Shown here: piece by piece, positions 1,098 through 36,594 of the stretch | Position numbering within the stretch: the first letter of the stretch is position 1 | Layout: each line of letters begins with the position of its first letter | Source: Macrostomum lignano | Lineage: Eukaryota | Reading direction: 5' to 3' | NCBI GenBank assembly: GCA_002269645.1 | Contig: NIVC01004669.1 | Span: forward strand, 1 to 38,536 | DNA length: 38,536 nt | Made by a program: the position numbers and the translations under genes | The notes under the pieces: model-generated | Seen by the model: only the letters and a program-made list of their open reading frames with translations | The model's database searches: none | Told to the model about the DNA's origin: nothing

Positions 1098-13144
<12,047 letters not shown>

Positions 13145-14316: not shown

Positions 14317-14945
<629 letters not shown>

Positions 14946-20965: not shown

Positions 20966-20998
<33 letters not shown>

Positions 20999-21505
20999 TG
21001 TCCCCAGTCCCAGTCCCAGTCCCAGTCCCTGTCCCAGTCCCTGTCCCTGTCCCAGCCCCAGTCCCAGTCCCAGTCCCTGTCCCAGTCTCTGTCCCCAGTC
21101 CCAGTCTCAGTCCCTGTCCCAGTCTCAGTCCCTGTCCCAGTCCCAGTCCCTGTCCCCAGTCCCAGTCCCAGTCTCAGTCCCTGTCCCCAGTCCCAGTCCC
21201 AGTCCCAGTCCCTGTCCCAGTCCCTGTCCCTGTCCCAGCCCCAGTCCCAGTCCCTGTCCCAGTCTCTGTCCCCAGTCCCAGTCTCAGTCCCTGTCCCAGT
21301 CTCAGTCCCTGTCCCAGTCTCAGTCCCAGTCTCAGTCCCAGTCCCAGTCTCAGTCCCAGTCCCTGTCCCAGCCCCAGTCCCAGTCCCAGTCCCTGGTCCC
21401 TGTCCCCAGTCCCAGTCCCAGTCCCTGTCCCAGCCCCAGTCCCAGTCCCAGTCCCAGTCCCTGGTCCCAGTCCCTGTCCCCAGTCCCAGTCCCAGTCTCA
21501 GTCAC
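20790..21505. repeat. (CCCAGT/CCCTGT)n hexamer repeat
   Basis: Direct; the minus strand reads GGGACT/GGGACA runs. Confidence 0.95.
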
Positions 21506-23723: not shown

Positions 23724-23885
23724 TCTTAACGCTGCTACCTACACCTGCCTCCCTTTACACTGCTACCTACACCTGCCTCCCTTCACGCTGCTACCCTACA
23801 CCTGCCTCCCTTTACACTGCTACATACACCTGCCTCCCTTTACACTGCTACATACACCTGCCTCCCTTTACACTGCTACCCTAAA
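23724..23885. repeat. 28-bp minisatellite ACACTGCTACCTACACCTGCCTCCCTTT, ~5-6 copies
   Basis: Direct. Confidence 0.9.
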
Positions 23886-23916
23886 CCTGCGTCTTTAACA
23901 CTACTACCATGCTTGG

Positions 23917-24068
23917 GCGCAACCTAGGGATTCACCCGGCCGTTTCTATTGGCAACACACACATGTAAGCCGCTATTGGACGGAATAGTAGTCACGCGAC
24001 TGCTCTCAGCCAATAGCGACTTACATGTGTTGCCAATAGAAACGGCCGAGTGATTCCCAAGGTTGCGC
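23917..24068. mobile_element. 152-bp foldback/MITE-like element
   Basis: ~60-bp inverted arms GCGCAACCTAGGGATTCACCCGGCCGTTTCTATTGGCAACAC..CTATTGG / CCAATAG..GTGTTGCCAATAGAAACGGCCGAGTGATTCCCAAGGTTGCGC; no clear TSD. Confidence 0.65.
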
Positions 24069-24614
24069 ATGTATGACTACTAACCTACATTTTCCACCCT
24101 TACTACCTACTACCCGACTACAGCTCCCTCACACACTAGCTTTCAGAACTGCACAATCCTTCACGTTCTGTACATATCTAGTTTCTGTTACGGGCCTTGC
24201 ATTTTTCTATCCTCTATCCTAATATGCCTTAAATTTATTGAAAGTGACAGAATGTTCTCAGGGTGTAATCAAATCACGAATATCATGATTTCAAGATCAT
24301 ATTACGTATTTGTATTTAATAAACTCTTTAAATGCATGAAACAGCGAAAACAGAGAAAGACCGTTTGTTAGCAAGCGTATAGGCTCAGTAAATAAATATA
24401 TTATAACAGAAATTAGTTACAATTTGCCGTCAAAATTTGACTTTAATCAAATCAAATAAAATAAAATGTCTATCACAATTGTTTTGTAGAGCCGGACAAT
24501 ATAAAAAGGGAAATCTCCAGAAGCAATTTCGAGGCTCTGAAATGTAAAGAGAAGCAAGTGACTTAAAAGTTACCCAGCTTAATCCTGTAGTAACAGACCT
24601 AGTAGATATTTGCT

Positions 24615-24703
24615 ATCATTCAGAGAGAAGATTAGGCACCATTCATAGACCCAACAATAGTCAGGCTCATATGGTTGATCCAGGAAATGTCTCATCATTG
24701 ATG
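24615..24703 (-). ncRNA. SNORD7: Box C/D snoRNA, mgU6-47-like (U6 Am47) with a second guide to the 18S 5' end
   Basis: C ATGATGA 24698-24692. D guide CTAATCTTCTCT+CTGA pairs 12 nt with U6 AGAGAAGAUUAG, and D+5 falls on A47. D' guide GGATCAACCA pairs with 18S UGGUUGAUCC. Confidence 0.85.
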
Positions 24704-24736
24704 TACAGCTGGTTAGTAGGATATTGGAAAGGGGCA

Positions 24737-24828
24737 ATAAATCAGAGAGAAGTTTAAAAAACGCAATTCATTTAGCCAATAGTTACATTGACTCATATGG
24801 TTGATCCAAAAATGTCTTATTATTTTAC
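24737..24828 (-). pseudogene. Degenerate copy of the mgU6-47-like snoRNA
   Basis: Shares GGATCAACCATATGA and CTTCTCTCTGA, but box C reads ATAATAA and the U6 guide is mutated. Confidence 0.6.
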
Positions 24829-25008
24829 AACATGAACTCCTGATTTATTGGGTTAGAAATAGCATTGTCTCACCTCAAAGCTGCAGATCTTAACGCACAA
24901 ACTGGAGTTGATTGAACTCCTGCAAAAATAAAATGGTAAATTAACAATCAGACAATAAAAGGTCTGGCACACTACTTAAATGAGCTAATTTGCATAGTTA
25001 TAATTGAC

Positions 25009-25082
25009 AGTAGTCAGATAGGGGCGCTTGTCTGCACATTTGAGAACTAAGAAAGACTAATCCATATAAATCATCATTACAT
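25009..25082 (-). ncRNA. Box C/D snoRNA, U80/snR60-like D guide (28S AUAG[G]GGCG) plus adjacent D' guide
   Basis: C ATGATGA 25077-25071; D guide CGCCCCTAT+CTGA; D' guide GATTAGTCTTT+CTTA pairs with 28S AAAGACUAAUC. Confidence 0.75.
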
Positions 25083-25267
25083 GTGGTAGAGTAGCTTGCT
25101 TAAGAGTTCAGAATCAAACAACTGATAAGAGACGCTTACCTGCGAAAAAAAATTGAATTCGACATATTTTGAAGCAATCAGCCGCATTCGCTGCTGAAAA
25201 GATTTAATTGATTGACTTAAACAATAGTAGCTTATTATTTGCGCATTTTACTAGAGTCCTAGAAAGT

Positions 25268-25353
25268 ATTTCTCAGGTATATCTAATAACAGTCCGCATT
25301 TATGTTATTTACATCGGACAAGAGGTGTCAAATTGTTTTTGTCATCATTTAGC
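25268..25353 (-). ncRNA. Box C/D snoRNA, 28S CAA[G]AGGUGUCA guide with a degenerate U44-like D guide
   Basis: C 25348-25342; TGACACCTCTTGT+CCGA; D CTGA 25276-25273; paralog of 28224-28305. Confidence 0.7.
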
Positions 25354-25403
25354 TAATAAAAAAGCAATCTGATTTAAAAAACTAGAGGCTAGTTATATTA
25401 AAA

Positions 25404-25482
25404 ACAAATCAGAACCCAGTGCTATCATCACATTGTCAATAATCAGGTCAAAGTGAAGAATTCTGAGTTATCATCACGGATT
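25404..25482 (-). ncRNA. SNORD37: Box C/D snoRNA, U37-like D' guide plus SNORD88/snR76-like D guide
   Basis: Perfect C GTGATGA, D' CTGA, C' GTGATGA and D CTGA. TTCTTCACTTTGAC pairs 14 nt with 28S GUCAAAGUGAAGAA; AGCACTGGG pairs with 28S CCCAGUGCU. Confidence 0.88.
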
Positions 25483-25655
25483 CTTAATATAACATAAGCC
25501 TCTACAGAAGGTCCTACTGATCTTACCTTGCTAAATTAGTTGCAGCACTAGCCAGCCAAGCAAGAATATGTACTAAAATTTTGAGAGGAAAGTGACTACT
25601 TAAAGTAATTGAAAAAAATGCCTAAGATAGCAGCGTAAAATACTATAATTAGTAA

Positions 25656-25742
25656 TAAAGTCAGATTAGGGATATTTGTTAATCACAACTGGAGTTTTCT
25701 AAAACATTATCATAGTAGGTAAGGAATTATTCATCACTAGTT
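25656..25742 (-). ncRNA. Box C/D snoRNA, paralog of the U50-like RNA at 29750
   Basis: C GTGATGA 25737-25731; D' guide CCTTACCTAC pairs with 28S GUAGGUAAGG; D guide ATATCCCTAAT+CTGA is degenerate. Confidence 0.65.
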
Positions 25743-25947
25743 AGTTTCTGGTACGAGTATACAAATTATATATTTATTTAATTATATTACGAGCATATTG
25801 GCAGTCACTTACAAGTAAACTGAATCATGCAGCATCAGGTGCGTCACATAATCTGAGGATTTTAGGGAGGCACTAACGTAAAATGAGGAAGATACGTTAA
25901 GCAAAACACTTAGGCCTCGAATAGGAGCTAAAATACCAGCTTTATCT

Positions 25948-26029
25948 AGACGACAGAGCGCTGTAGTGCTTTATATTGTATCCAATACACTGATAAGGTT
26001 GATACTAAATTGCTGGATCGTCATGATAA
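25948..26029 (-). ncRNA. Box C/D snoRNA, U48-like, degenerate boxes
   Basis: C ATGACGA, D CTGT; guide CACTACAGCGCT identical to the copy at 30010. Confidence 0.55.
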
Positions 26030-26224
26030 AAATATCCAAGCATGTATCCTATCTGATAGATAAGCTTTATTACACCATTGCCAGCTTATTTGCTTAACTA
26101 TCGGTTTATAAGTTACACGATAAGAAGAAACTTAGAAATTCGTCTTAGAACACACGCAGTCAAACCAGCTATCTACAAGTATAATTTTCTTAAATATGCT
26201 ATAAGACCATATGTACACCGTAGA

Positions 26225-26313
26225 GCATCCATCTCAGCTGCCAATATGGTTAAATTTCATTATTGAAATCAAACAGCATGACGGTGTAAAATGAAATCAT
26301 CATTAATGGATGC
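26225..26313 (-). ncRNA. Box C/D snoRNA, ACCGTCATG family copy 1
   Basis: C 26303-26297, D 26237-26234, 8-bp terminal stem GCATCCAT/ATGGATGC; D' guide CACCGTCATGCTGT+TTGA. Confidence 0.8.
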
Positions 26314-26474
26314 TGAACTGTATATGGGATGTTAGAAACTAAAACAATGTCAGTTTTACCTGTTTTAACTCTTGTTTGAAATTTGAACGGGCAAACTGGA
26401 ATGCAGAGTAGAGATGGAGAATTTCTGGACACATAAAGAGTTGGCATTGGCTGATTTTGGTAAATGTTAGAAAA

Positions 26475-26559
26475 ATTTCTTAGATGGTGATGCATGGTAG
26501 ATAATTTTCATTTAAAGAAACCTATCAAAAGCCAAAGGTGATCAATATCATCATAACAG
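26475..26559 (-). ncRNA. Box C/D snoRNA, U33/snR55-like, D box variant CTAA
   Basis: C 26554-26548; guide CCATGCATCACCAT. Confidence 0.6.
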
Positions 26560-26763
26560 TAAGCATAGGCAAAAATATAAAAATAATTCTGGCTATTAAC
26601 TCACCTGTTGGCTCTGTAGACTTGTTGAACCAGTGCCATTTTGCCATAAAAACGAATCGGATTCTAAAACAGTGTTAAAACAAAGAATGGATGAATTTCT
26701 TAAGACGGGTGTCTTATGAAATACTTCAATACCATATGAAAGTTTCAACTAACACTTTCTGAT

Positions 26764-26868
26764 TCACATCAGATAGGGGCGTTAGTCAGCAGTTTTGTAA
26801 TTGGTTAAAATGTTTATTAACTAATTATAAAGCTCAGAAAGACTAATCAATAGAGATCATCATGTAAA
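26764..26868 (-). ncRNA. Box C/D snoRNA, U80/snR60-like D guide plus adjacent D' guide (copy 2)
   Basis: C 26863-26857; GATTAGTCTTT+CTGA; CGCCCCTAT+CTGA. Confidence 0.8.
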
Positions 26869-27029
26869 TAGAAAGTGAAAATTATACTACTAATAGTAGA
26901 TAAAAAAGACGCCTTACCCCTCAAAGCCCCGAGATGACATTGGTCGGTAGAAGACATCTGAAATAAAAAATAACATGAAAATTGCAATTAAAGATGCAAA
27001 AACTCACTTAAATAACAAAACAACTGTTT

Positions 27030-27117
27030 AATCATCAGGTAGAGCTAATAATAGTCCGCATCTAATCAAGCATTATCGGACGATTGAACTGTGGAAATTA
27101 AAATTTCATCATAATTA
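27030..27117 (-). ncRNA. SNORD44: Box C/D snoRNA, U44-like (18S UAG[A]GCUAAUA)
   Basis: C 27112-27106; D guide TATTAGCTCTAC+CTGA; D+5 matches the U44 site (human Am166 as recalled). Confidence 0.78.
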
Positions 27118-27157
27118 ACAAGAATCTAAACAAATATAGGTGGCAGCCATGATTATG

Positions 27158-27236
27158 ATAGTTCAGAACCCAGTGCTAACATCAGTTGGTTTTTGTTCAG
27201 TTCAAAGTGAAGAATTATGGGTTATCATCATTATTT
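27158..27236 (-). ncRNA. SNORD37: Box C/D snoRNA, U37-like plus SNORD88-like guides (copy 2)
   Basis: C 27231-27225; TTCTTCACTTTGAA+CTGA; AGCACTGGGTT+CTGA. Confidence 0.82.
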
Positions 27237-27636
27237 ATAACATTGCGTGCCATTTCTGCCATTATAAAAAGGGCGGTTTTGTTAAATACTACTATTAATA
27301 GTAATGTAATCCGCGCTCATCAAAAGCAGACACTTTGGGAGATAAACAAAAGATCTCTACTCTGCTTCTGGATTTTATGCGGTTGTCAGCGTGATCTAGC
27401 GACTAAATGAATCAGTCACCAATAAGATATTTTTTGCGTGTCGGTGATTGAAACGAGAAAGTCGCAACTAACAAAAACACAAGTTCAACAGTGCAAGCCT
27501 ACCTGACTTTGCAAGTTAACACTTGACTTGATATCCAACCAGGAAAAATGCACTAAAATGGGCAAGTGAAAATATGGCTACAGTAGAAACGAGTTTTTTA
27601 AAAGCACATATTTTTTTTATTAATACCAATAAAAAA

Positions 27637-27713
27637 GCAAATCAGATGGTGATGCATGGAAATTATATATCATGACCAAATCAAACACGGATGTGTTATT
27701 TTCATCACTTATC
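27637..27713 (-). ncRNA. SNORD33: Box C/D snoRNA, U33/snR55-like (18S GUGG[U]GGUGCAUGG)
   Basis: C GTGATGA 27708-27702; CCATGCATCACCAT+CTGA forms 14 bp including 2 G.U with 18S. Confidence 0.82.
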
Positions 27714-27717
27714 TATA

Positions 27718-27788
27718 CACTGTCGGATCCAGAAGGGGGGTCAAAGGGGTCGGCTGACCTCACGGAAAAAATCCCGGATCCGCCACTG
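27718..27788. mobile_element. 71-bp MITE-like element
   Basis: Imperfect 13-bp TIRs CACTGTCGGATCC / GGATCCGCCACTG; a GC-rich island in AT-rich context. Confidence 0.5.
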
Positions 27789-27966
27789 CATTTATAGATA
27801 TGTTATACATTTAAATAGAGCTGAGCAATAAAAATTACCTTGGATGGATGTAGCAGTGAAACTTCATTGACGCGGCAAACTGGAAAGAAATTAAAAAAAT
27901 ATGACTTGTAAAAAAGATGTAGTTTTATCAAATAGGTACAACTAATAGGTAGCTAATAGGTAGATA

Positions 27967-28050
27967 AAATATCAGGCTTGAAAATTCTGTACATGCCGTA
28001 CACTGGGTACAGTTCATATGAACTATGCTATAATTAATTCATCATTGTAA
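27967..28050 (-). ncRNA. Box C/D snoRNA, U77/snR60-D'-like (28S GGUGA[A]CUAUGC)
   Basis: C 28045-28039; GCATAGTTCAT+ATGA; D CTGA 27975-27972. Confidence 0.78.
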
Positions 28051-28223
28051 AAAGTAAAATAAGGGTGGGGAAAAATACTTAAGCATTGCTAACTGACCTG
28101 AAGCACTGTTAAGAAGGCTTACAATTTTCCAGCTGGATTTTAGCGTCCTCTAAAATGAAATAAGTGAATATGAAAACTTGCATCGATTCTTAACGATTTC
28201 TATTAGGACAAAAGAGCTTAATA

Positions 28224-28305
28224 CTTGATCAGATAGAGCTAATAAACTCCGCATTTACTTAGTAAATATCAGACAAGAGGTGTCAATATTCTATCATCAT
28301 TTATA
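28224..28305 (-). ncRNA. SNORD44: Box C/D snoRNA, double guide: 28S CAA[G]AGGUGUCA (D') and U44-like 18S site (D)
   Basis: C 28300-28294; TGACACCTCTTGT+CTGA; TATTAGCTCTAT+CTGA. Confidence 0.85.
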
Positions 28306-28869
28306 CCTAAAATCTGTAAACTGTGTGTCTGTGGCCAATTTTGTTCGCTATGGACTCTCAAACCGCTCAACCAAATGACACCGTTTTGCACCCCCCCAAC
28401 CTCACTACGGAGAGCGTCTTCCCAGTATTCCCACCTTAAAGTGCAAAAAGTTGCTGCAAAGAAAGCGGGATTTTTTTTACTTAATCCTCTATAGCGGCGC
28501 TCCACCTTTATCAAACCTACTCAAATTTGACACAAACAATCTCTAACTATTTCGACACAAGCGTGTAAAATGTCGAGTCATAAAGTCAATCCTGTACGGA
28601 GCTGTGCACGTTTAAAGTTAGTCTGCTTTTTGTCAGCGTAGCAACCACCCCAATCGTTTGGCTGCCGTAACTTTGCTTAACGCTAGCATGAAATTTGTTG
28701 CCGAACGATCAGTCGCTCATTCCCTCCTCCAACATCTGGCGGTCTCAAACTGGTTGGGTTGGCGTCCGGATGGCGGGTGGCTTAGAGAAGTCAGGTTCAC
28801 CATCACGATAATGTCTTGCCTCGTGCTGCTCGGGTTTGATTAGTATTAGAATTTGATTAATGTATTTTT

Positions 28870-29142
28870 TCTATTGACCTGCTAACCTACCTGAAATTCT
28901 ATTGACCTGCCACCCTACCTTAAATTCTGTTGACCTGCCACCCTACCTGAAATTCTATTGACCTGCCACCCTACCTTAAATTCTATTGACCTGCCACCCT
29001 ACCTTAAATTCTATTGACCTGCCACCCTACCTTAAATTCTATTGACCTGCCACCCTACCTTAAATTCTATTGACCTGCAACCTACCAGAGATTTTATTGA
29101 CCTGCCACCCTACCTGAAATTCTATTGACTTGCCACCCTACC
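28870..29142. repeat. 28-bp minisatellite TTCTATTGACCTGCCACCCTACCTTAAA, ~10 copies
   Basis: Period 28 (28981, 29009 ...). Confidence 0.95.
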
Positions 29143-29484
29143 ATTCTTTAGACTTATTTTCTGTCTCGATATCAAGTCTCAACTCTGTAACTCAATCAGG
29201 ACAGTAACTGTAAGCATGTGAAGTTTGTCTGCTTTTTCTGGTGTTTGTGCCGCTCATTAATCTCTCATCTCATCGCTTAGTCAGATCAATCAATGCTTGT
29301 CTCAAATCTTTATTTAACACGAATTTACTACATTCATCAAACCTCTATCCTAACTTTAAAGTTTTTGTTTCAGTATGACTTTAAATTTAAGGATGTATGC
29401 AATAAAGAGTTCCGGGGATTGGAATTCTGTGGGTTTAAAATCCGGGGGTTTTAAAGAGTTTGTAAGGTATTAATAAAGGCTTTA

Positions 29485-29561
29485 AAACTCAGAGACAAAT
29501 AGAACTAAACTCATGCGAGATCATACAACATGACGGTATAAAATCTGAGTCATCATGAATG
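29485..29561 (-). ncRNA. Box C/D snoRNA, ACCGTCATG family copy 2
   Basis: C 29556-29550; ACCGTCATGTTGT+ATGA; D 29492-29489. Confidence 0.7.
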
Positions 29562-29749
29562 AAGCCAATCTATTGCTTGTAACAAAGATTATACATAAAC
29601 CCAAGTAATATGAAAAAAAGTGAATTGAAGCTTACCTTAAATTTAGATCAGAGTCACACTGGATCGCTAAATCTGAAAATAATTAGTGACAAAATTTATT
29701 TTTTGATTTACTTCTAAAAATTTAAGCTTACATATATGTAATTTAGACT

Positions 29750-29826
29750 AGCATTTCAGATTCGGGAAATATTGCATTCACATTATTAATAAATCATAGT
29801 AGATAAGGAAATAGTCATCATTAAAA
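29750..29826 (-). ncRNA. Box C/D snoRNA, U50-like D guide (28S CUUC[G]GGA) plus a neighbouring D' guide
   Basis: C 29821-29815; TCCCGAAT+CTGA; D' guide CCTTATCTAC pairs with 28S GUAGAUAAGG. Confidence 0.7.
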
Positions 29827-30009
29827 ACATAATAGTAGAGCTTATTACTGAAAAAATTGAGTTGGTTATTGGTTTTGAATTCACTTACTTTTTATATTGA
29901 TTTTAAAAGGCCCCAGGACAGCTTAGACCTGTAGTAATAAAGAGAAAGTGGCATTGTTAGAGAAATTAAAAAATATTCTACAATATAAAAACACTTCTGA
30001 TCAATATAT

Positions 30010-30093
30010 ATACATCAGAGCGCTGTAGTGTCTTATCACGTCCCTTTAAGAGATCACAGATAAGGTAAGCAAACGTATTTATCATCATAAAAA
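30010..30093 (-). ncRNA. Box C/D snoRNA, U48-like
   Basis: C 30088-30082; CACTACAGCGCT+CTGA resembles human U48 CACCGCAGCGCU-CUGA as recalled. Confidence 0.7.
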
Positions 30094-30151
30094 GTAGGCT
30101 TATACGCAAGGCTATCTACACTATAGTATATAGGCATAAAAATGGCAAATC

Positions 30152-30243
30152 AAGGGCTCAGACAGCAAATTTTCTTCAAAGAATCGCCAGCGTACACAAA
30201 TTGGTACACCAACTTCCGACGGTAATTCCAATCATCATTGAAA
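30152..30243 (-). ncRNA. SNORD65: Box C/D snoRNA, SNORD65/snR77-like (18S GCGG[U]AAUUCCA)
   Basis: C 30238-30232; TGGAATTACCG-T+CGGA (variant D'); D 30161-30158 preceded by TTTGCTGT (possible U24-like site). Confidence 0.75.
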
Positions 30244-30355
30244 ACGCCCAAGTTGCAGTTAATAGACCTAGTCCTAAGTATTAGTAAAAAAGTATATATT
30301 GTCCTAATTAAAAATCGAATACCAAAAAAGCAGCAAGTGTCGTATGTATACAGAA

Positions 30356-30443
30356 CTGTAATCAGCAGCCATTGAAGTTGGCATAAAGTATTTACTACAT
30401 AGAGCTTATTGCACTAAGCCAGGGATAACAAACATCATATTAC
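30356..30443 (-). ncRNA. Box C/D snoRNA, snR38/SNORD1-like (28S CACAG[G]GAUAAC)
   Basis: C ATGATGT 30438-30432; GTTATCCCTG-G+CTTA; D 30365-30362. Confidence 0.7.
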
Positions 30444-30642
30444 ATTTCTGAGGACACGTTGCTTGCTTGCTACTGACTTCTACTCGTACTAAAGAGAACA
30501 GAACTATTTGCTTCGGATTTTTTCAGACTGCTTTTAATTAGAAGATCGATTTAAGAACAAATACTTTCGTTAGTAAAATGGAGATAAACGATGATTCTGA
30601 ATGATGATGAGCAGCAAAGGTGTTAAGGGAAATGCCTATTGT

Positions 30643-30727
30643 ATTCACCTCAGCTGCCATTGTTTTTAATTATCAAAAGTGTGTCAAACAGCATGACGGT
30701 GTATAAAAATTGGTCATCATTTTTGGT
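30643..30727 (-). ncRNA. Box C/D snoRNA, ACCGTCATG family copy 3
   Basis: C 30720-30714, D 30653-30650, terminal stem ATTCACC/GGTGAAT. Confidence 0.8.
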
Positions 30728-30975
30728 GAATACAAGCGACGTACATGCTTAAATGAAAATTTCAGGCTATGTTTATGTATGATCACAAAAAGCAAAATAC
30801 AGTCAAAACCAATAATTACCTTAAATTTAGAAAATGAAACACTGGACCGGTAGACTGAGAACTTGTTAATGATCTACTACCAGTACCTATGAAAGTAGAG
30901 TTTTTGGGCGACAGGTTGTACTTTTTATAAAATGGCAAGCATAGCTTACATGTTCATTAAAATGTACTCAATAAA

Positions 30976-31053
30976 CTACATCAGATGGTGATGCATGTGA
31001 AATTGTCATGTTAACTCAAAACAAACAGTTGTGAATAATTATCATCATTTTTG
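30976..31053 (-). ncRNA. SNORD33: Box C/D snoRNA, U33/snR55-like (copy 3)
   Basis: C 31048-31042; CATGCATCACCAT+CTGA. Confidence 0.8.
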
Positions 31054-31170
31054 ACAGCCAGTTTTTTAAACCAAGCCACAACCTAACCTTATCTCTAAGG
31101 ATTCTGAATCTGATATAAAACTTAAAATCGATATTCTAGATTTTAAATAGTGTCATAAGGACATTGATAG

Positions 31171-31251
31171 CATCCACATCAGCTGCCATAGTTTTATTAT
31201 CAGGCGTATCAAACAGCATGACGGTGTAAAATTGATCATCATTTGTGGATG
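31171..31251 (-). ncRNA. Box C/D snoRNA, ACCGTCATG family copy 4
   Basis: C 31242-31236, D 31182-31179, 8-bp terminal stem CATCCACA/TGTGGATG. Confidence 0.8.
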
Positions 31252-31301
31252 ACAAACTGGTGCGTTAATTAGGCTATAAAAACTAACCATATACTAATAA
31301 T

Positions 31302-31687
31302 CGCTGTCAGAGAACGCTCAGAACCATAATTTACATCCAAACGGCTCTGCAAAAAAGAAGTGCAAGCACTCGCTTTTCGGGTCACGCTTCTATAGTGCTC
31401 ACTAACAAGTCAAAGGCGGTATAATAAATAATCAGTCTTCGACTATAAAAAGGAATTTAGCGAGCACCCTTGAAGCAAACCCTAAAGTGACAATAATAGT
31501 CAGCACTTCACTAAGAGAGCCTGTTCAAGCCAGCTGGCGCGCACACCAGCAAATCAAATTTGTGCCTGAAAGAAAAGGTTAACAAATAGAGGCAAAAAAA
31601 ACCCCCAATTTGGAAGACCTTTCATAACTATTCAAGCACATTTGAAAAGCTCAGTCAGAGAATGGATTAAAGCATTCATCATCGTTT
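31302..31687 (-). ncRNA. Long box C/D RNA with a guide for 28S UGAA[U]GGAUUAA (SNORD17/snR65-like site); 3' end uncertain
   Basis: C 31682-31676; TTAATCCATTCT+CTGA; candidate D 31310-31307; paralog at 32316-32629. Confidence 0.55.
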
Positions 31688-31860
31688 CTCTGACAAATGT
31701 TTCACAGTTTCGAAGAAAAACTCACCGAATAAATGTTGTAAGACTTTGTAGGCGATTTTTGTATGCCAGCTCCTAAAATTTGCAAAAGTTAGTTGAAATA
31801 AAATTCGCCAATGCCATACATGAGACAGCGCCAATGCCTAAAAGTTGATTGAATAAATTT

Positions 31861-31941
31861 AAAATTCAGAATGAAAATAGTATCTACAGAAAGCACAAGA
31901 GTGCATTCCGACATATGCTTGTCAAGTATTCATCATTAAAT
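31861..31941 (-). ncRNA. SNORD27: Box C/D snoRNA, U27/snR74-like (18S CAU[A]UGCUUGUC)
   Basis: C 31936-31930; GACAAGCATATG-T+CGGA (12-nt match); D 31869-31866. Confidence 0.8.
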
Positions 31942-32132
31942 TAAAAAAGCAAATTGTTAAAGTACCAGATGTTTCAGAACTTACATTTTCAGAAGCAGAT
32001 TTGCTTTTGTTAATTGCTCGTGACAAGGGAAAAACAGCAAGTCTGCAAATGTGTGTAAACAAAGAACGATATTTAGAGGGACATAGGTGCAAATATTGAT
32101 TAAGTAAGTTGTAAATAAGCACACAAAAGTAA

Positions 32133-32207
32133 ATTGATCAGTTATCGTTTCTTTTTATTAATTCATAGTCATTGTGACTCAAAACACGTTGGGTAGCATC
32201 ATTTATA
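32133..32207 (-). ncRNA. Candidate box C/D snoRNA
   Basis: C variant ATGATGC 32202-32196; D 32141-32138; AAACGATAA could pair with 18S UUAUCGUUU. Confidence 0.4.
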
Positions 32208-32315
32208 CATTCAAATAGGCTGGGGTTTTTTGATAATTAAACAAGCATTTTTGATAATTAGTTTGATAATATTGTTTAATACAACTGCAATATGAAAATT
32301 TACAGATACTATCAA

Positions 32316-32629
32316 GTTTATCAGAGTCATTCAGATCCAAATTTAACATCTTGACAGCAATCTCCAAGTATGCATGCAGTCATATTGGATTATCAGGCAT
32401 ACAAAACAGGTGTTTCTGTTTAAAAAGGACAGAAAACTAACAACCTGTAATGCTAGAATAGGTTGCCAGATATCCAAGTGACAATAAATTAGCAGCACAA
32501 ATAGAGAAGCCTTCCAAGGTGGCGCGCACACCAACTTAGTGCAAAAGACAAGACTTATATAATAGATGATAAGCCAGTCTTTACACATAAACTTGGTCAG
32601 AGAATGGATTAATACTATCATCATAATAC
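32316..32629 (-). ncRNA. Long box C/D RNA, copy 2 (SNORD17/snR65-like site); 3' end uncertain
   Basis: C 32624-32618; TTAATCCATTCT+CTGA; shares GGTGTGCGCGCCA and TTATTGTCACTT with copy 1; candidate D 32324-32321. Confidence 0.55.
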
Positions 32630-32982
32630 TCTGATATTTTTATTTTGCAATCATGACTGTTGCATCTTATCTTACATTGGTACTTTAAGTAGCTACAAAT
32701 TTGCCTAAAATGAGTTTCCTTAAGCTTTTTATTCAAAATTTAGTTAATTTTGGTTTGCAATAGAGACTAATACAAGTAATAAGATAGGAATGAGATTTTT
32801 TTAATTATATACAATAAAAAAAGTCAAAAATTTGAGCTTTTAAAAATTAGCAAATTTTGATTTATGACAAAAAATGCTCTTTTGGAACATCATTTAATAA
32901 TGCTAAAGGTGTACAGTGCAATATATTATATAATAAATTGACACTATTTTCAAGCACACATCTGTAGGTTTTCACCCTTGGC

Positions 32983-33621
32983 AATTGTTATTTGTTTGGT
33001 GACCAGACAAATAGCAATGTGGTTAGGGCCTATTTGTCTGGTTACTGGATAATAGCCATCTTTCTTTATTCATCTAGTTAATACTGGACAAATAGGCATT
33101 TTGTTATTTGTCTAGTTAAATTGATATTCTATTTTATAGAAACTCCAAGGGTGAATATTCCAAGATTTTAAAGACTTTTACTTGTATACCAAATTATGCC
33201 AAATTGCATATATGCATTACATATATCTGCTTTGCTTGCACTAGTATAACAAAATATTAATCAGGATACTAGAAAAGGTCTTAAAAATCTAGAATATTTA
33301 TCACTAAACAAATAGATATTCATGTTAGCAATTTAACTAGACAAATAGCAACTAGGTTTATTTTTGTGCATAGAATGTATGCACCTTAAATCAAAAAATT
33401 GCACCCTGAAATTGAAACGTAACTGTGGTCTCAACCTATTATTTTTCTATTAAAACCTTATTTGCACTGCTTTAAAATAAGAAAAAGAGAAATTGCACTT
33501 TGAGCCCTAAAATTGCATATTGAAAATGAGTAAAGCCTAAGGTGCGATTTTGCATCTTGTCTTTAACAAAAAACCGAAATAGCAAAAGGTTATTTGTCTA
33601 GTCACTAGACAAATAACAACT
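32983..33621. mobile_element. Foldback/MITE-like element with palindromic TATTTGTCTAGTCACTAGACAAATA motifs
   Basis: ~32-bp inverted termini (32983-33014 vs 33590-33621), each itself a hairpin, with degenerate internal copies. Confidence 0.5.
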
Positions 33622-36594
33622 ACTTTCACCCTTTGAACTTGAAGTAGAGCCTATCTTTCGTAATGCTCAATGCAGCGTTTACAGGCTTTGCTAATTCTAT
33701 TCCAATAGGGATAAATATAATTTTAAAAAGCTACATATAATTGAAAGTTAGGCTAAAGTAGTAAAAAATCACAAGATTATATATTAGGCCTAAATACTAA
33801 GTCCAGTTTGCCTAGGTAGGTTACTAGGCTATTTCTAGTACTAAGATAGGCCCTTATAACATGGTATAACTTATAAGACCAAGACTACCACATACCAAGA
33901 TGGCCACACTTGAGGAGCTAAGGGAGGAATTTGGCGCACAATATATTATTGGATAGTGCTAAAGAGATGAGTTAATGAGTAGGTAGGAGAGCCAGTAAGA
34001 CAAGGCTGCAAAAGAGGAACCTAGGTCTAGGAGAGGAATAGCAATGCTAGCGCCTAGAAGATTGGTAGCTCTTCTCAATACCAGTAGCCAGTAATAGCTG
34101 TGGCAGTCTTAGTCATGTACCCTAACCCTAGTAGGCCCCTAGTACATTTAAAATTGAAACTAGGCCTAGCCCTAGTTTAGAGTTAGGCCTCACCTAATAC
34201 TACAACAAGAACTAGGCCTAGCCAGCTCACTTAGGCCTACTTTAACTTTACTGCAGCTTAAACCATTTGCCCTATAACTCTTAAGACATGTAGTCATAGG
34301 CCCGTAGTCAAAGGATGTTTGCTAGGCTGCCTAGCCTAGGATACTTACATTTAACATTTCAATCTGATCTGATATAGATTAGGGCTAGTGCCGGCTTGCG
34401 GTATACTAGCCCTAGCAGTGTCCATGGGAACTCCATGCCTCTGTTAGAAGTAGGCCCTATACTAAAGACAAAGCATTGCTCTTCTTTGCTAAGGGCCAGG
34501 CAGGTCTAGGAAATTAGCTATGGGCAGGCCGAGCATAGACAAAGTAGGCCTAAGGCAAGCTAGGCTAGGCTAGACTAAAATAAAAAAAACAGATTTAGAC
34601 ATAGATCATAGGGCTAGGTGGTGGGGAGTTACAATTAAAAGGGAAGCGAAGCCAAACAAGGCAGAAAAACTTTTTTCCACAGATACACAGTTGTTTAAGT
34701 AGACGAAGTAGGCTGTACTAAGGTTAGGCCTAGTGATCACGCTCTCCTGCCTCTCAGTGCCAGTTTATGGAGCGGGCTTGAGGGAGAACATCTTTTAAAA
34801 ATGCGTAAATTTTTTGTCAATGCAATTTAACTTTACGAATTTGAACAAATGTTACAAGCAATTTTGCCAAGAAGACTAGGAAAGCCATGCGGTACAAAAT
34901 TAATAGGGTAAAATTATATGTAGCATGATATTTTTGATAGTCTTGTATAACTAATTTTTTGCCATTATTTATTTTGAATTTACATAACTAATTTATACGG
35001 CCCGGCCCGTGAGAAGCTCTCACAATGGCTACATTGGAGCCGACGTACAATATTTCTTTTACCTTTTTCAAGCAGGATAACCCTCATCCGTCAAAACAAT
35101 GCATCCCATAAATTGCGCCCCATTATTGCCTAATATAGTTTCCTGCAAGCCCCGATGTACAATACCATGCAATTTTCCGTAAATTGCGCCCGCCCAAACG
35201 AAAGGGAAAAATTCACCACGAAAGCTCGATATGAATAACAGTAAAATGGCCATGTATCCCACGTACTGTACCTTCCTTGTATGCAGTTTCAGCCAACTAC
35301 AAGGCATCGCGTGGAAATACCTACTGAGAGAGGGAGACGATGGCGCCCAAACTTAGAGACCAGGCCAGGGGGCCGGGGCGCTTCTGGGAGACAGATACTG
35401 TTAGAGAGCGATGCCGAGAGAGAGTTATTTAATTTTGCGTCGTGTTGAGCTTTAAACTAATTGTACATGTATAGGCTTTGTGATATCGATTAATATAAGT
35501 TTATTTACTAGCGACCATGCAGTTAAAAATGCGTATACAATTCTAACACTGCACTATTATAAGCATATAAATGTGAGGTTCAAGCATAATTTGGATTGTA
35601 CATGTACATTGCAAAATATAAAACACCAGAAGTAAAATCATCATTGTCACGCAAGCACTAGGAAGCAGGCGCCTTCAGATAACTACCAAATTAAATTTTA
35701 CATGTACATTTAGATGACGCGCTTAACCCTGCATATAAAAATTTATAAATATAATAAAAAAGTACTTCACTGGCTCAAATAATACATACATGCACAAGTG
35801 TATGGCTACTACTACAGCTACACCGAAAGTCTTCTTTTGTAGCAGTATTTGAAATGGATAGATCCGAGACATAATTGCAACATGTGTGCTTCTTATCTAT
35901 AGTCATCGATCCTACCTAGCTGCACCTTTACTGTACCTCTTTACTTTGAGCTCTACATGTACATACCAAGTAAAGTACATGTATGTAAATGTACATGTGT
36001 GTACTTCTCGATCATTCTACTCTCATTTCAATGATTGCTTCGAAGGGTGGCAGATTCAGAAAAAGATATTTTTAATAACTCCCAAAAACAGTTGTGATCC
36101 ACGTAAACTGCCTGTTTGAATTTTATTTCACATCGACATTCGACAAACGCGCGTGAAAGGCAAATAAAAGCCTACTAGTATAGTACATGTATGTGCGAAG
36201 AACAAGCAGCCAGCATAATATGCATTTACTATACATGTACATACTCGTATATTTCGTACTATAGTAACAAACAGTACAAATTAGTCCAAATACATGTACA
36301 TGAAAATGTTAGATCTTATAGTTATAACTCCTATACTGTACTCGTATATAAATTAATAAAACAAAAATTTGTGACCGTTTAGTAAATCTGTGATAAGTGT
36401 ATCCAGTAAAGCCCAGTAATCAGCTACCTGTATATTTTTCTATGGAATTTTGGCTGATAGAAACAACAACGCGGCAATTTAAACTTTTTTCTTCTGTGAA
36501 TACGAAGAATGGAAATTGAAACTATAAGTACTCGTAGATGCAATAAATACGCAAAAAAGGCAAAAGTGAATCCGTGATAACGCTCGCATTTGTC

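What the first reader, a model, noticed from the sequence alone, without database searches (positions are those of the whole stretch)
24615..32629. Hidden cluster of ~27 box C/D snoRNAs in an ORF-free AT-rich block
Seen: RTGATGA ... CTGA pairs 70-100 nt apart recur every 100-400 bp, all on the minus strand, several with 7-8-bp terminal stems, separated by 25-59-nt AG/GT-bounded exons. Established: 9-14-nt elements next to D/D' boxes are complementary to conserved 18S, 28S and U6 segments, and the D+5 rule lands on sites I recall for U27, U33, U37, U44, U50, U77/U80, SNORD65, snR38, SNORD88 and mgU6-47. Inference: one UHG/GAS5-like host collects guides that vertebrates spread over many hosts (UHG, GAS5, RPL13A, EEF2). 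A standard gene annotation would probably leave it blank.
Basis: partly seen in the sequence, partly recalled or inferred. Interest (0 to 1): 0.9.

Follow-up and report, generated by a model that had tools for sequence, protein, structure and literature searches.

The report
Flatworm multi-snoRNA host gene cluster
This AT-rich, ORF-free 8-kb stretch of a Macrostomum lignano-type flatworm genome is a non-coding gene whose introns carry about 27 box C/D methylation-guide snoRNAs; it is a real feature that routine annotation misses, but of a well-known kind.

Summary
In 24400-32900 the C-box motif RTGATGA occurs 24 times on the minus strand, 2 on the plus strand, and 1.6 times in shuffles.

I delimited 27 C...D units (24613-32633, minus strand). 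Twenty-two have canonical boxes. Five are variant or degenerate: sno02, 08, 19, 21 and 26.

Rfam gives no hit at gathering score. All 31 sub-threshold hits lie on the minus strand, and 29 are C/D families. Their guide elements match the family consensus for SNORD37, SNORD33/snR55, SNORD27, Z102/R77, snoZ30 (U6-A47), sn2417, snoR38 and snoR77Y.

Guides next to D/D' boxes pair with conserved rRNA far above control levels. The D+5 rule lands on known sites: 18S A27, A166, U627 and U1326; LSU A817, G908, C2197, G2791 and G2815; and U6 A47.

AG...GT exon-like units alternate with the snoRNAs. Acceptors sit 77-94 nt after the preceding D box in 10 of 14 cases. The joined exons have no ORF over 50 aa.

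The units diverge less between genome copies than their flanks (2.0% vs 3.3%).

It is a UHG/GAS5/Drosophila-Uhg-type host gene: a new member of a known kind. Unusual points are 2-3 snoRNAs in some introns, two 312-385-nt C/D RNAs, and a possible H/ACA snoRNA. No expression data were available.

The parts
32322..32633 (-). sno01: long (312 nt) box C/D RNA. The 5' guide UAAUCCAUUCU|CUGA targets the LSU U in GAAU*GGAUUAA (yeast numbering U2314).
   Evidence: C and D boxes plus a CAGAGU/ACUCUG terminal stem. The guide is identical to the Rfam sn2417 consensus. The target is conserved in 6/9 rDNAs. Fold z = -4.97. Only 3 differences in 312 nt against L001.
32131..32208 (-). sno02: doubtful C/D unit (C = ATGATGC, no terminal stem). 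Its only pairing is 7 bp at the U18 site region (25S A649).
   Evidence: no Rfam hit
31858..31944 (-). sno03: SNORD27/snR74-type guide, D' = CGGA, predicted target 18S A27.
   Evidence: Rfam SNORD27 28.3 bits with identical guide UGACAAGCAUAUGUC. 12-bp Watson-Crick match in 7/9 rDNAs. Maps to A27. 0 differences against L001.
31308..31692 (-). sno04: second long (385 nt) copy of the sno01 type, with the same guide.
   Evidence: Alignment with sno01 shows shared blocks. Rfam sn2417 24.5 bits. Terminal stem CAGAGAA(A)CG/CGUUCUCUG. The interior diverges faster (9 differences in 157 nt).
31171..31251 (-). sno05: canonical C/D with an 8-bp terminal stem. Member of the sno05/07/12/20 paralogue family; target not assigned.
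   Evidence: weak Rfam SNORD34 hit
30976..31056 (-). sno06: SNORD33/snR55-type, D guide targeting 18S U1326.
   Evidence: Rfam SNORD33 36.1 bits, E = 0.0012. Target conserved in 9/9 rDNAs. Maps to U1326.
30643..30731 (-). sno07: paralogue of sno05 with a 7-bp terminal stem of different sequence.
   Evidence: 0 differences against L002
30356..30444 (-). sno08: snR38/snoR38-type (C = ATGATGT), D' guide GUUAUCCCUG targeting LSU G2815 (yeast numbering).
   Evidence: Rfam snoR38 23.7 bits with identical guide. Target conserved in 9/9 rDNAs. Maps to G2815.
30154..30249 (-). sno09: SNORD65/snR77/snoR77Y-type, D' = CGGA, targeting 18S U627.
   Evidence: Rfam snoR77Y 23.2 bits with identical guide GGAAUUACCGUC. 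Conserved in 8/9 rDNAs. Maps to U627. 0 differences.
30009..30094 (-). sno10: canonical C/D, target unassigned. Lies 60 nt after sno09 in the same putative intron.
   Evidence: 0 differences
29751..29828 (-). sno11: C/D unit. The D' guide targets the LSU G in GUAG*(G/A)UAAGG (yeast G1892). The 9-bp D guide targets CUUCG*GG (human G2863 / U50 site equivalent).
29478..29566 (-). sno12: diverged member of the sno05 family. Its two guide changes are both C>U.
28224..28307 (-). sno13: the D' guide targets LSU G2791 (yeast numbering, snR48 site). The D guide targets 18S A166 (SNORD44 / Z102-R77 type).
   Evidence: Rfam snoZ102_R77 28.2 bits with identical guide UAUUAGCUCUAUCUGA; 0 differences
27966..28053 (-). 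sno14: the D' guide targets LSU A817 (yeast numbering; snR60 site, human U77/U80 site).
   Evidence: Rfam snR60_Z15 22.9 bits; 0 differences
27637..27715 (-). sno15: snR55/SNORD33-type, D guide targeting 18S U1326.
   Evidence: Rfam snosnR55 35.6 bits, E = 0.005, with identical guide CAUGCAUCACCAUCUGAUU
27302..27465 (-). Tentative H/ACA snoRNA: hairpin, H box AGAUCA, hairpin, then ACA 3 nt from the end. Lies in the same putative intron as sno16/17.
   Evidence: The only candidate on either strand in a hairpin-H-hairpin-ACA scan. Fold z is only -1.83. No canonical rRNA pocket match was found.
27157..27239 (-). sno16: the D' guide is SNORD37-type (LSU A, yeast A2214 = human A3697). The D guide targets LSU C2197 (snR76/SNORD88 site).
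   Evidence: Rfam SNORD37 30.1 bits, E = 0.012; weak SNORD88 hit
27028..27119 (-). sno17: the D guide targets 18S A166 (SNORD44 type). The D' guide has only a weak match.
   Evidence: Rfam snoZ102_R77 25.1 bits; 6-bp terminal stem
26762..26871 (-). sno18: the D' guide targets the LSU A in AAAGA*CUAAUCG (yeast A917). The D guide targets LSU G908 (snR60 / human U80 site).
26475..26560 (-). sno19: third 18S U1326 guide. The D box is CTAA in this copy and CTGA in L002.
26225..26313 (-). sno20: paralogue of sno05/07 with an 8-9-bp terminal stem.
   Evidence: 0 differences
25946..26032 (-). sno21: degenerate paralogue of sno10 (C = ATGACGA, D = CTGT).
25655..25744 (-). sno22: paralogue of sno11, with D' guide UUCCUUACCUACU targeting the LSU G in GUAG*GUAAGG.
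25405..25484 (-). sno23: best SNORD37-type copy (A3697 equivalent), which also carries the C2197 guide.
   Evidence: Rfam SNORD37 38.2 bits, E = 1e-4, with 21 nt identical to the consensus. Score 14 in the rDNA panel..
25268..25355 (-). sno24: paralogue of sno13 that keeps the LSU G2791 guide (D' = CCGA). Its 3' guide has decayed.
   Evidence: 0 differences
25008..25084 (-). sno25: paralogue of sno18 with the same two guides (D' = CTTA).
24736..24824 (-). sno26: decaying paralogue of sno27. The C box is ATAATAA here and ATGATGA in L002, and the U6 guide is eroded.
   Evidence: (8 differences in 89 nt)
24613..24706 (-). sno27: mgU6-47/Z30 (SNORD7)-type. The D guide CUAAUCUUCUCU|CUGA targets U6 A47. 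The 5' guide GGAUCAACCA targets the 18S 5' end (U8), as in Tetrahymena TtnuCD24.
   Evidence: Rfam snoZ30a 18.2 bits, snoZ30 17.7 bits and TtnuCD24 21.4 bits, all with identical guide elements. U6 mapping uses the U6 sequence from memory.
31726..31837 (-). Putative host exon (an alternative acceptor lies at 31775).
   Evidence: acceptor/donor scores 3.0/9.5
31985..32042 (-). Putative host exon (tttgcag|ACTTGC...GAAAAT|gtaagt).
   Evidence: read from the sequence
30820..30886 (-). Putative host exon (the automatic call gave 30820-30841).
29889..29928 (-). Putative host exon
   Evidence: acceptor 86 nt after the sno10 D box
29636..29672 (-). Putative host exon
   Evidence: acceptor 83 nt after the sno11 D box
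28460..29470 (.). Repeat or transposon-like insert inside an intron. It includes a 28-nt tandem array at 28869-29142.
   Evidence: present in L002 as well
28435..28453 (-). Putative host micro-exon
28098..28149 (-). Putative host exon
   Evidence: acceptor 79 nt after the sno13 D box
27839..27879 (-). Putative host exon
   Evidence: acceptor 92 nt after sno14
27503..27552 (-). Putative host exon
   Evidence: acceptor 89 nt after sno15
26918..26957 (-). Putative host exon
   Evidence: acceptor 77 nt after sno17
26605..26663 (-). Putative host exon (ttttag|AATCCG...CAACAG|gtgagt).
   Evidence: read from the sequence
26360..26395 (-). Putative host exon
   Evidence: acceptor 84 nt after sno19
25813..25872 (-). 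Putative host exon. It is interrupted by a 2.9-kb transposon in L001/L002.
25527..25621 (-). Putative host exon (an alternative acceptor lies at 25573).
25140..25193 (-). Putative host exon
   Evidence: acceptor 79 nt after sno24
24874..24919 (-). Putative host exon
   Evidence: acceptor 94 nt after sno25
24430..24584 (-). Putative terminal exon (acceptor at 24584 or 24537), with an ATTAAA signal near 24445.
   Evidence: read from the sequence; inference only
33896..33935 (-). Possible first exon and promoter: CCAAT, then TATATT, then a pyrimidine-rich start (CCTCCCTTAGCTCCTC), then GCCATCTTG|gtatgt.
   Evidence: read from the sequence; inference only, not covered by L001/L002

Best explanation
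The block is a non-coding, multi-intron snoRNA host gene on the minus strand of a Macrostomum lignano-type genome.

Inferred mechanism. RNA polymerase II transcribes about 9 kb, possibly from a TOP-like start near 33.9 kb to a poly(A) signal near 24.4 kb. Splicing joins roughly 20 short exons into an RNA with no usable ORF. The excised introns are trimmed down to 22-27 box C/D snoRNPs. Each snoRNA pairs a 9-15-nt element just upstream of its D or D' box with rRNA, or with U6 snRNA in the case of sno27. Fibrillarin then 2'-O-methylates the nucleotide paired to the fifth position upstream of the box.

Shown here:
- the boxes, their strand bias and the terminal stems;
- guide complementarity above chance, and its register on known methylation sites;
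- splice-signal alternation, and a 77-94-nt spacing between snoRNA and acceptor;
- the absence of an ORF;
- lower divergence of the snoRNA units between genome copies.

Inferred, not shown: transcription, splicing, RNA accumulation and methylation.

The cluster grew by internal segmental duplication (sno10~21, 11~22, 16~23, 13~24, 18~25, 26~27, 05~07~20~12, 06~15~19). Redundant copies are decaying: sno19 has a D-box mutation and sno26 has lost its C box in this copy.

Introns that hold 2-3 snoRNAs separated by only 30-60 nt imply an extra endonucleolytic step, or undetected alternative splicing. The rest of the pathway would be the usual debranching followed by exonuclease trimming.
For: Strand-specific C-box excess: 24 against 2, with 1.6 in shuffles.

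Rfam: 31 of 31 sub-threshold hits are on the minus strand and 29 are C/D families. Four have E <= 0.012. Guide elements are identical to family consensus for SNORD37, SNORD33/snR55, SNORD27, Z102/R77, sn2417, snoZ30, TtnuCD24, snoR38 and snoR77Y.

Guide complementarity: guides adjacent to D/D' boxes were compared with 9 independent eukaryotic rDNAs. At a score of at least 12, 9 guides pass against 0/0/0 in controls.

D+5 register: sites fall on 18S A27, A166, U627 and U1326 and on U6 A47, and on LSU A817, G908, C2197, G2791 and G2815. Overall 15 of 101 predictions hit known Nm positions, against 1 of 77 with reversed targets.

Host architecture: acceptor...donor units number 21 on the minus strand and 5 on the plus strand. 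Ten of 14 acceptors lie 77-94 nt after the preceding D box. That matches the spacing optimum known for intronic C/D snoRNAs (established knowledge: Hirose and Steitz 2001). Joined exons have 18-25 stops per frame and a longest ORF of 50 aa.

Constraint: snoRNA units differ from the L001/L002 copies at 2.0% of positions, against 3.3-3.4% outside (Fisher p = 0.0005 to 0.0014). Four paralogues share a guide but have different, self-complementary terminal stems.
Against: No RNA-seq, small-RNA or methylation data could be consulted.

Every Rfam hit is below its gathering score.

The rRNA panel comes from unrelated eukaryotes, not from this species. The site numbering rests on human 18S, yeast 25S, U6 and site lists recalled from memory. 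These were checked only internally: the recalled lengths were 1869 and 3396 nt, and 37 of 37 recalled Nm positions had the expected base.

Exons were predicted with a simple hand-made splice score. The 5' and 3' ends of the host are guesses.

Guides in about 10 units still have no convincing target. These are sno02 and the sno05/07/12/20 and sno10/21 families; sno11/22 have no known-site D' target.

Several putative introns hold 2-3 snoRNAs. The simple model of one snoRNA per intron trimmed by exonucleases does not explain this.

A transposon sits inside one putative exon in the other genome copies.
Confidence: 0.82

Rival explanations
1. The same genuine C/D snoRNAs are made from a polycistronic precursor that endonucleases cut apart, in the plant, yeast or trypanosome style. 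Splicing plays no part, and the 'exons' are just spacers.
For: Several units are only 30-60 nt apart with no exon-like unit between them: sno09-10, sno16-17, sno23-24 and sno26-27. This needs endonucleolytic separation in any case. No spliced RNA has been seen.
Against: Strong donor and acceptor signals alternate with the snoRNAs on the coding strand only (21 against 5). Ten of 14 acceptors sit 77-94 nt after a D box. That regularity has no reason to exist without splicing-coupled processing.
Confidence: 0.1
2. The cluster is not a free-standing non-coding gene. It is the upstream part (outron or 5' cistron) of one transcription unit with the MCTS1-like gene 1 kb downstream on the same strand, and the two are resolved by spliced-leader trans-splicing.
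For: The MCTS1-like ORF (23089-23637, minus strand) lies directly downstream on the same strand. It has a pyrimidine tract plus AG acceptor 2 nt before its ATG. In M. lignano 38.8% of genes are trans-spliced, and about 7% of transcription units carry several trans-splice sites (PMC5730564).
Against: An ATTAAA signal and about 800 nt of repeat and palindrome sequence lie between the two genes. There are no SL or read-through data. The acceptor could serve an ordinary 5'-UTR intron.
Confidence: 0.12
3. Most units are dead copies (retroposed or duplicated pseudogenes), and only a few are expressed. The array is a decaying duplication rather than a working 27-guide gene.
For: Internal segmental duplication is evident. 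Five units have defective boxes, and sno19 and sno26 differ from the other genome copy exactly in a box. sno26 has 8 differences in 89 nt.
Against: Twenty-two units keep perfect C and D boxes. Nine units show zero differences against the other copy, while flanks differ at 3.3%. Paralogues keep guides and compensated terminal stems.
Confidence: 0.08

Closest known systems
Drosophila Uhg1-Uhg8 non-coding snoRNA host genes
   Same: A non-coding spliced host carries many box C/D snoRNAs in its introns, all in one orientation, including duplicated isoforms. Uhg1 encodes 16 snoRNAs and no other transcript (PMC4430873).
   Different: Here there are 27 units (22 canonical) from about 14 guide families. 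There are up to three per putative intron, a U6 guide, two 312-385-nt C/D RNAs and a possible H/ACA unit. The organism is a flatworm, and expression is untested.
Vertebrate UHG (SNHG1) and GAS5
   Same: Both are short-exon, ORF-poor, 5'TOP-type hosts whose introns encode C/D guides. The snoRNA lies about 70-80 nt upstream of the 3' splice site (established knowledge). Guides equivalent to U27 (SNHG1) and U44/U77/U80 (GAS5) are present here.
   Different: Vertebrates follow one snoRNA per intron and carry about 8-10 per host. Here guides are combined that vertebrates keep in several hosts, such as RPL13A for U33 and EEF2 for U37 (host assignments from memory). A TOP start could not be verified here.
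Plant and yeast polycistronic snoRNA clusters, and plant intronic clusters
   Same: Several snoRNAs sit tens of nucleotides apart on one precursor, which needs endonucleolytic separation.
   Different: Those clusters are usually independent of splicing. Here the splice-signal pattern and spacing indicate intron hosting.
Rfam families SNORD37, SNORD33/snosnR55, SNORD27, snoZ102_R77, snoZ30/snoZ30a (mgU6-47), sn2417, snoR38, snoR77Y, TtnuCD24
   Same: Guide elements are identical or nearly identical to the family consensus, with the same box register.
   Different: All scores are below gathering (best 38.2 against 45). Outside the guides and boxes the sequences are unrelated. Some units combine guides that sit on separate snoRNAs elsewhere, such as SNORD37 plus SNORD88 on sno16/23.
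Human SNORD116/SNORD115 arrays in SNHG14
   Same: Dozens of tandemly duplicated C/D snoRNAs lie in the introns of one non-coding host.
   Different: Those are orphan, imprinted, near-identical copies. Here most units are canonical rRNA or snRNA guides of different specificities.

Membership tests
Box C/D snoRNA (class) | C box RUGAUGA near the 5' end and D box CUGA near the 3' end, on one strand. | tested here: met
   22 of 27 units have exact boxes. The strand bias is 24 against 2, with 1.6 in shuffles.
Box C/D snoRNA (class) | Terminal stem that brings the C and D boxes together. | tested here: met
   8 units have a stem of at least 4 contiguous bp in strict register, against 0.15 in shuffles. 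Stems of 7-9 bp occur in sno01, 04, 05, 07 and 20, with compensated differences among paralogues. Stems are weak or AU-only in several others.
Box C/D snoRNA (class) | An antisense element of at least 9-10 nt directly upstream of D/D', with the target nucleotide opposite position 5. | tested here: met
   At a score of at least 12 in at least 5 of 9 rDNAs: 9 guides against 0/0/0 in controls. 15 of 101 predicted sites fall on known Nm positions, against 1 of 77 in the control.
Box C/D snoRNA (class) | Accumulates as a stable small RNA bound by fibrillarin, Nop56, Nop58 and Snu13. | not testable with these tools
   No expression or IP data were available.
Specific Rfam families (SNORD37, SNORD33, snosnR55, SNORD27, snoZ102_R77, snoZ30, sn2417, snoR38, snoR77Y) | Bit score at or above the curated gathering threshold. 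| tested here: not met
   0 hits at gathering. The best are 38.2 against 45 (SNORD37), 36.1 against 44 (SNORD33) and 35.6 against 50 (snR55).
Specific Rfam families (same list) | Same guide element in the same register relative to the D/D' box, i.e. the same target nucleotide. | tested here: met
   Alignments show consensus-identical guides, for example 21 nt for SNORD37, 19 nt for snR55 and 15 of 16 for snoZ30.
Non-coding multi-snoRNA host gene (UHG/GAS5/Uhg type) | snoRNAs lie in introns, all in the sense orientation, between short exons with AG/GT boundaries. | tested here: met
   Acceptor...donor units number 21 on the minus strand and 5 on the plus strand, interleaved with the snoRNAs. 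This is an in-silico result only.
Non-coding multi-snoRNA host gene (UHG/GAS5/Uhg type) | The snoRNA is positioned about 70-90 nt upstream of the 3' splice site. | tested here: met
   10 of 14 automatically predicted acceptors lie 77-94 nt after the preceding D box.
Non-coding multi-snoRNA host gene (UHG/GAS5/Uhg type) | The spliced RNA lacks a significant ORF. | tested here: met
   About 1.2 kb of joined exons has 18-25 stops per frame and a longest ORF of 50 aa. No ORF of at least 90 aa lies in the block except one that starts in a C box.
Non-coding multi-snoRNA host gene (UHG/GAS5/Uhg type) | 5'-terminal oligopyrimidine (TOP) transcription start. | tested here: inconclusive
   A CCAAT/TATA-like/pyrimidine-rich candidate lies at about 33.90-33.95 kb, but there are no TSS data.
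Non-coding multi-snoRNA host gene (UHG/GAS5/Uhg type) | One snoRNA per intron (the vertebrate rule). | tested here: not met
   sno08-10, sno16-17 (plus the H/ACA candidate), sno20-21, sno23-24 and sno26-27 share putative introns.
Non-coding multi-snoRNA host gene (UHG/GAS5/Uhg type) | Existence of a spliced, polyadenylated host transcript. | not testable with these tools
   No transcriptome access was available.
H/ACA snoRNA (candidate at 27302-27465) | Hairpin, H box (ANANNA), hairpin, then ACA 3 nt from the 3' end. | tested here: met
   It was the only such arrangement found on either strand.
H/ACA snoRNA (candidate at 27302-27465) | A pseudouridylation pocket complementary to rRNA around an unpaired U-N, about 14-16 nt from the box. 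| tested here: inconclusive
   The box distances fit at 14 and 16 nt. The pocket arms, however, match LSU AUGAA...AACGAGA with 6 intervening nt rather than 2 (reading). Fold z is only -1.83.

The most novel reading that the evidence does not exclude
The locus may be more than a Uhg-like host.

(a) Its primary transcript may continue into the adjacent MCTS1-like translation-reinitiation-factor gene. The two would be resolved by spliced-leader trans-splicing, so that about two dozen ribosome-modification guides and a translation factor come from one flatworm 'operon'.

(b) The two 312-385-nt C/D RNAs (sno01/sno04) carry a conserved, stably folded internal domain of 230-300 nt. They may represent a new composite snoRNA type rather than simple lineage-specific expansions.
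Probability: 0.12. Interest if true: 0.55.

Novelty: new member of a known kind. Interest (0 to 1): 0.35.

Why it matters
Flatworm snoRNAs are almost uncharted. A homology survey of Schistosoma genomes found no unambiguous homologue of any known snoRNA except U3 (PMC2770079). Planarian rRNA methylation sites were mapped only recently, and without guide assignments (PMC11649923).

This locus supplies identifiable guides, in a transgenesis-capable flatworm model, for at least 11 conserved modification sites:
- 18S A27, A166, U627 and U1326;
- LSU A817, G908, C2197, A3697 (human numbering), G2791 and G2815;
- U6 A47.

All of them sit in one 8-kb gene, so a single deletion could test their joint role in ribosome function, stem cells and regeneration.

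The locus also shows that Rfam gathering thresholds miss every one of these genes. That is a practical warning for annotating non-model invertebrate genomes. As biology it is an expected kind of locus, not a new mechanism.

Tried and rejected
- Rfam at gathering thresholds gave nothing. The permissive mode was needed.
- A loose complementarity search had too much background to be useful. It required 10 bp, allowed up to 2 G-U pairs, and accepted a match anywhere in the unit. It gave 37 real hits against 23-30 in controls.
- A box-anchored search at a score of at least 9 was little better, at 63 against 29-42. Only stricter scores separate signal from noise.
- The species' own rRNA could not be obtained, because the collections hold no M. 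lignano rDNA. I used 120 metagenomic eukaryotic rDNA loci plus human 18S, yeast 25S and U6 from memory, with internal checks.
- The conserved 5' guide of the sno05/07/12/20 family was tentatively matched to LSU ACAGC*AGGACGGUGG. That pairing has an A.G mismatch at guide position 7, and the rRNA segment is invariant in 52 rDNAs. The target is left unassigned.
- Guides of sno10/21 and several 3' guides gave only chance-level hits.
- My first recollection that the sno01/04 target is yeast U2421 was wrong. It maps to U2314.
- A 16-nt 'micro-exon' at 31288-31303 was rejected because its acceptor would lie 4 nt after sno04.
- The H/ACA candidate's pocket does not fit a canonical target.
- The sigma-70 promoter and terminator scan is not applicable to a eukaryote.
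- One search was an empty script.
- Protein-level tools were used only to identify the organism and the neighbouring genes.

Full report
**Observation.** Between 24400 and 32900 the C-box motif RTGATGA occurs 24 times on the minus strand and twice on the plus strand. Two hundred dinucleotide-preserving shuffles gave 1.62 +/- 1.17 (maximum 5). The remaining 30 kb of the window contains 0 and 1. The block has 32-36% GC, against 50-60% in the coding flanks. It contains no ORF of at least 90 aa except one that begins in a C box. I delimited 27 C...D units, sno01-sno27, from 32633 down to 24613, all on the minus strand. Twenty-two have exact C and D boxes. The other five are sno02 (ATGATGC), sno08 (ATGATGT), sno19 (D = CTAA), sno21 (ATGACGA / CTGT) and sno26 (C box lost).

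**Organism and context.** The intronless MCTS1-like ORF just downstream (23089-23637, minus strand; Pre-PUA plus PUA domains) is encoded with an identical protein sequence on two contigs of GCA_002269645.1 (NIVC01...). That is the Mlig_3_7 assembly of the flatworm Macrostomum lignano (PMC5730564). The window is 96-97% identical to those contigs, L001 and L002. It is therefore another copy or haplotype of a genome known to contain 180 Mb of duplicated blocks at 95% identity or more. No gene other than MCTS1 is called on the matching contig stretch. The GenBank annotation deliberately excluded non-coding transcripts.

**Are they snoRNAs?** Rfam gives no hit at gathering score. In the permissive mode, all 31 hits in 24-34 kb are on the minus strand and 29 are box C/D families. 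Four have E <= 0.012: SNORD37 (twice), SNORD33 and snR55. The alignments show that the guide elements are what match:
- 21 nt identical to the SNORD37 consensus;
- CAUGCAUCACCAUCUGAUU for snR55;
- UGACAAGCAUAUGUC for SNORD27;
- UAUUAGCUCUAUCUGA for Z102/R77;
- UAAUCCAUUCUCUGA for sn2417;
- CUAAUCUUCUCUCUGA for snoZ30 (the U6-A47 guide);
- GUUAUCCCUG for snoR38;
- GGAAUUACCGUC for snoR77Y;
- UGGAUCAACCA for Tetrahymena TtnuCD24.

**Guide complementarity against chance.** The species' rRNA was not available. I fetched 120 eukaryotic rDNA loci from metagenomes and used nine complete units as a panel. Conserved rRNA 11-mers are antisense to the minus-strand RNA 29 times in 24-34 kb, and antisense to the plus-strand RNA twice. 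A loose search had high background. I therefore anchored guides to D/D'-like boxes and compared real rRNA with reversed, antisense and complemented rRNA. At a score of at least 11 in at least 5 of 9 rDNAs there are 15 guides, against 5/1/1 in the controls. At a score of at least 12 there are 9, against 0/0/0.

**The D+5 register.** For numbering I used human 18S, yeast 25S and U6 written from memory. The recalled sequences have the reference lengths (1869 and 3396 nt). All 37 yeast 25S Nm positions I recalled carry the expected base. These are internal checks, not database look-ups. The predicted sites are:

| Unit(s) | Predicted site | Known counterpart |
|---|---|---|
| sno03 | 18S A27 | SNORD27 |
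| sno13, sno17 | 18S A166 | SNORD44 type |
| sno09 | 18S U627 | SNORD65/snR77 type |
| sno06, sno15, sno19 | 18S U1326 | SNORD33/snR55 |
| sno27 | U6 A47 | mgU6-47/Z30 |
| sno14 | LSU A817 | snR60 site |
| sno18, sno25 | LSU G908 | snR60 / human U80 site |
| sno16, sno23 | LSU C2197 | snR76/SNORD88 site |
| sno16, sno23 | LSU A2214 (= human A3697) | SNORD37 |
| sno13, sno24 | LSU G2791 | snR48 site |
| sno08 | LSU G2815 | snR38 |

Weaker or unmatched predictions are U2314 (sno01/04), G1892 (sno11/22), A917 (sno18/25) and the human G2863 equivalent (sno11). Systematically, 15 of 101 predictions at a score of at least 9 fall on known Nm positions, against 1 of 77 with reversed targets.

**Host-gene architecture.** A simple acceptor/donor score finds 21 non-overlapping AG...GT units on the minus strand and 5 on the plus strand. 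They interleave with the snoRNAs. Ten of 14 automatically chosen acceptors lie 77-94 nt after the D box of the preceding snoRNA. Three of the four exceptions have an alternative acceptor at 87-94 nt. This matches the known optimum for splicing-coupled processing of intronic C/D snoRNAs (established knowledge). About 1.2 kb of joined exons has 18-25 stops per frame and a longest ORF of 50 aa. A CCAAT/TATA-like/pyrimidine-rich segment ending in GCCATCTTG|gtatgt at about 33.9 kb is a candidate TOP-type first exon. An ATTAAA near 24445 is a candidate 3' end. Both are inferences.

**Comparative evidence.** Against L001/L002, snoRNA units differ at 2.0% of positions (50 of 2477). Positions outside differ at 3.3-3.4% (Fisher p = 0.0005 to 0.0014). 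Nine units have no difference at all. The differences are informative. sno19 has D = CTAA here but CTGA in L002. sno26 has ATAATAA here but an intact ATGATGA in L002. Both units are redundant paralogues. The four paralogues sno05/07/20/12 share a guide but have different, self-complementary terminal stems.

**Departures from the textbook picture.**
1. Some putative introns hold two or three snoRNAs 30-60 nt apart: sno08-10, sno16-17, sno20-21, sno23-24 and sno26-27. This needs an endonucleolytic step or undetected splicing.
2. sno01 and sno04 are 312 and 385 nt long. They have C/D ends, 6-9-bp terminal stems and shared internal blocks. sno01 folds far better than shuffles (z = -4.97) and has only 3 differences in 312 nt.
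3. One hairpin-H-hairpin-ACA arrangement at 27302-27465 may be an H/ACA snoRNA. Its fold z is -1.83 and no canonical target was found.
4. The cluster contains an internal segmental duplication and a repeat or transposon insert at 28460-29470.
5. The other genome copies carry a 2.9-kb inverted-repeat transposon inside a putative exon.

**Comparison and novelty.** The closest known systems are the Drosophila Uhg genes (Uhg1 hosts 16 snoRNAs; PMC4430873) and vertebrate UHG/GAS5. The individual snoRNAs work like SNORD27, 33, 37, 44, 65 and 88, snR38, snR60 and mgU6-47. They fail Rfam's gathering thresholds, so formal family membership is not met even though guide identity is. I found no paper in the searchable library that describes snoRNAs of Macrostomum. 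Schistosome surveys found no snoRNA homologue but U3, and planarian Nm sites were mapped without guides. The locus is therefore a new member of a known kind. It is useful for annotation and for flatworm ribosome biology, but it is not mechanistically surprising. I score interest at 0.35.

**Limits.** There are no expression, splicing or methylation data. rRNA from the species itself was unavailable. Reference sequences and site lists come from memory, with internal checks only. Exon and transcript ends are predictions.

Noticed in passing
window 23089-23637 (-), acceptor at about 23640: An intronless MCTS1/Tma20-like gene (Pre-PUA plus PUA domains) lies about 1 kb downstream of the snoRNA host on the same strand. 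A pyrimidine tract plus AG sits 2 nt before its ATG. This could be a spliced-leader trans-splice site or a 5'-UTR intron acceptor.
   Followed up: partly
window 23925-24075: A long, near-perfect palindrome containing CCAAT/ATTGG boxes lies between the host 3' end and MCTS1. It is followed by a 28-nt tandem array (23725-23908). It may be a MITE or a promoter element.
   Followed up: no
L001 4766-7633 and L002 4763-7633, equivalent to window ~25865-25872: A 2.9-kb element with terminal and long internal inverted repeats is inserted in the other genome copies and absent from the window. The insertion point lies inside a putative host exon.
   Followed up: partly
L001 2225-2429: An assembly gap (a run of N) replaces the equivalent of window 28197-31536. 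The public contig NIVC01000218.1 therefore lacks sno04(part)-sno12.
   Followed up: yes
window 26475-26560 and 24736-24824: Box mutations are specific to this copy in redundant paralogues. The sno19 D box is CTAA here (CTGA in L002). The sno26 C box is ATAATAA here (ATGATGA in L002).
   Followed up: yes
window 33000-33620 (-): Repeated palindromic 'CTAGACAAATAAC / GTTATTTGTCTAG' units (MITE-like) lie in what would be the first intron of the host.
   Followed up: no
window 15448-16368 and 18556-19482 (-): There are two tandem paralogous ORFs with a Laminin_G_3 / concanavalin-A-like lectin domain, about 95% identical to each other.
   Followed up: no
window 6210-8400 (+) and 8988-10511 (-): A reverse-transcriptase (RVT_1) fragment from a retroelement lies next to a 507-aa ORF with KY-like Ig domains.
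   Followed up: no
window 1728-1975, 12250-12527, 14317-14946, 3175-4504, 10704-11787, 20793-21503, 36594-37243, 37817-38412: The window has a very high density of micro- and minisatellites: (GACA)n, (TCTCTCC)n, and 15-, 6-, 22- and 21-nt arrays. This fits the repeat-rich M. lignano genome. They produce many spurious long ORFs.
   Followed up: no
window 35320-35400 (-): A second promoter-like segment (GGCGCCATCGTCTCCCTCTCTCAGTAG|gtat) lies 1.4 kb upstream of the candidate host first exon. It could be an alternative first exon or belong to another gene.
   Followed up: no
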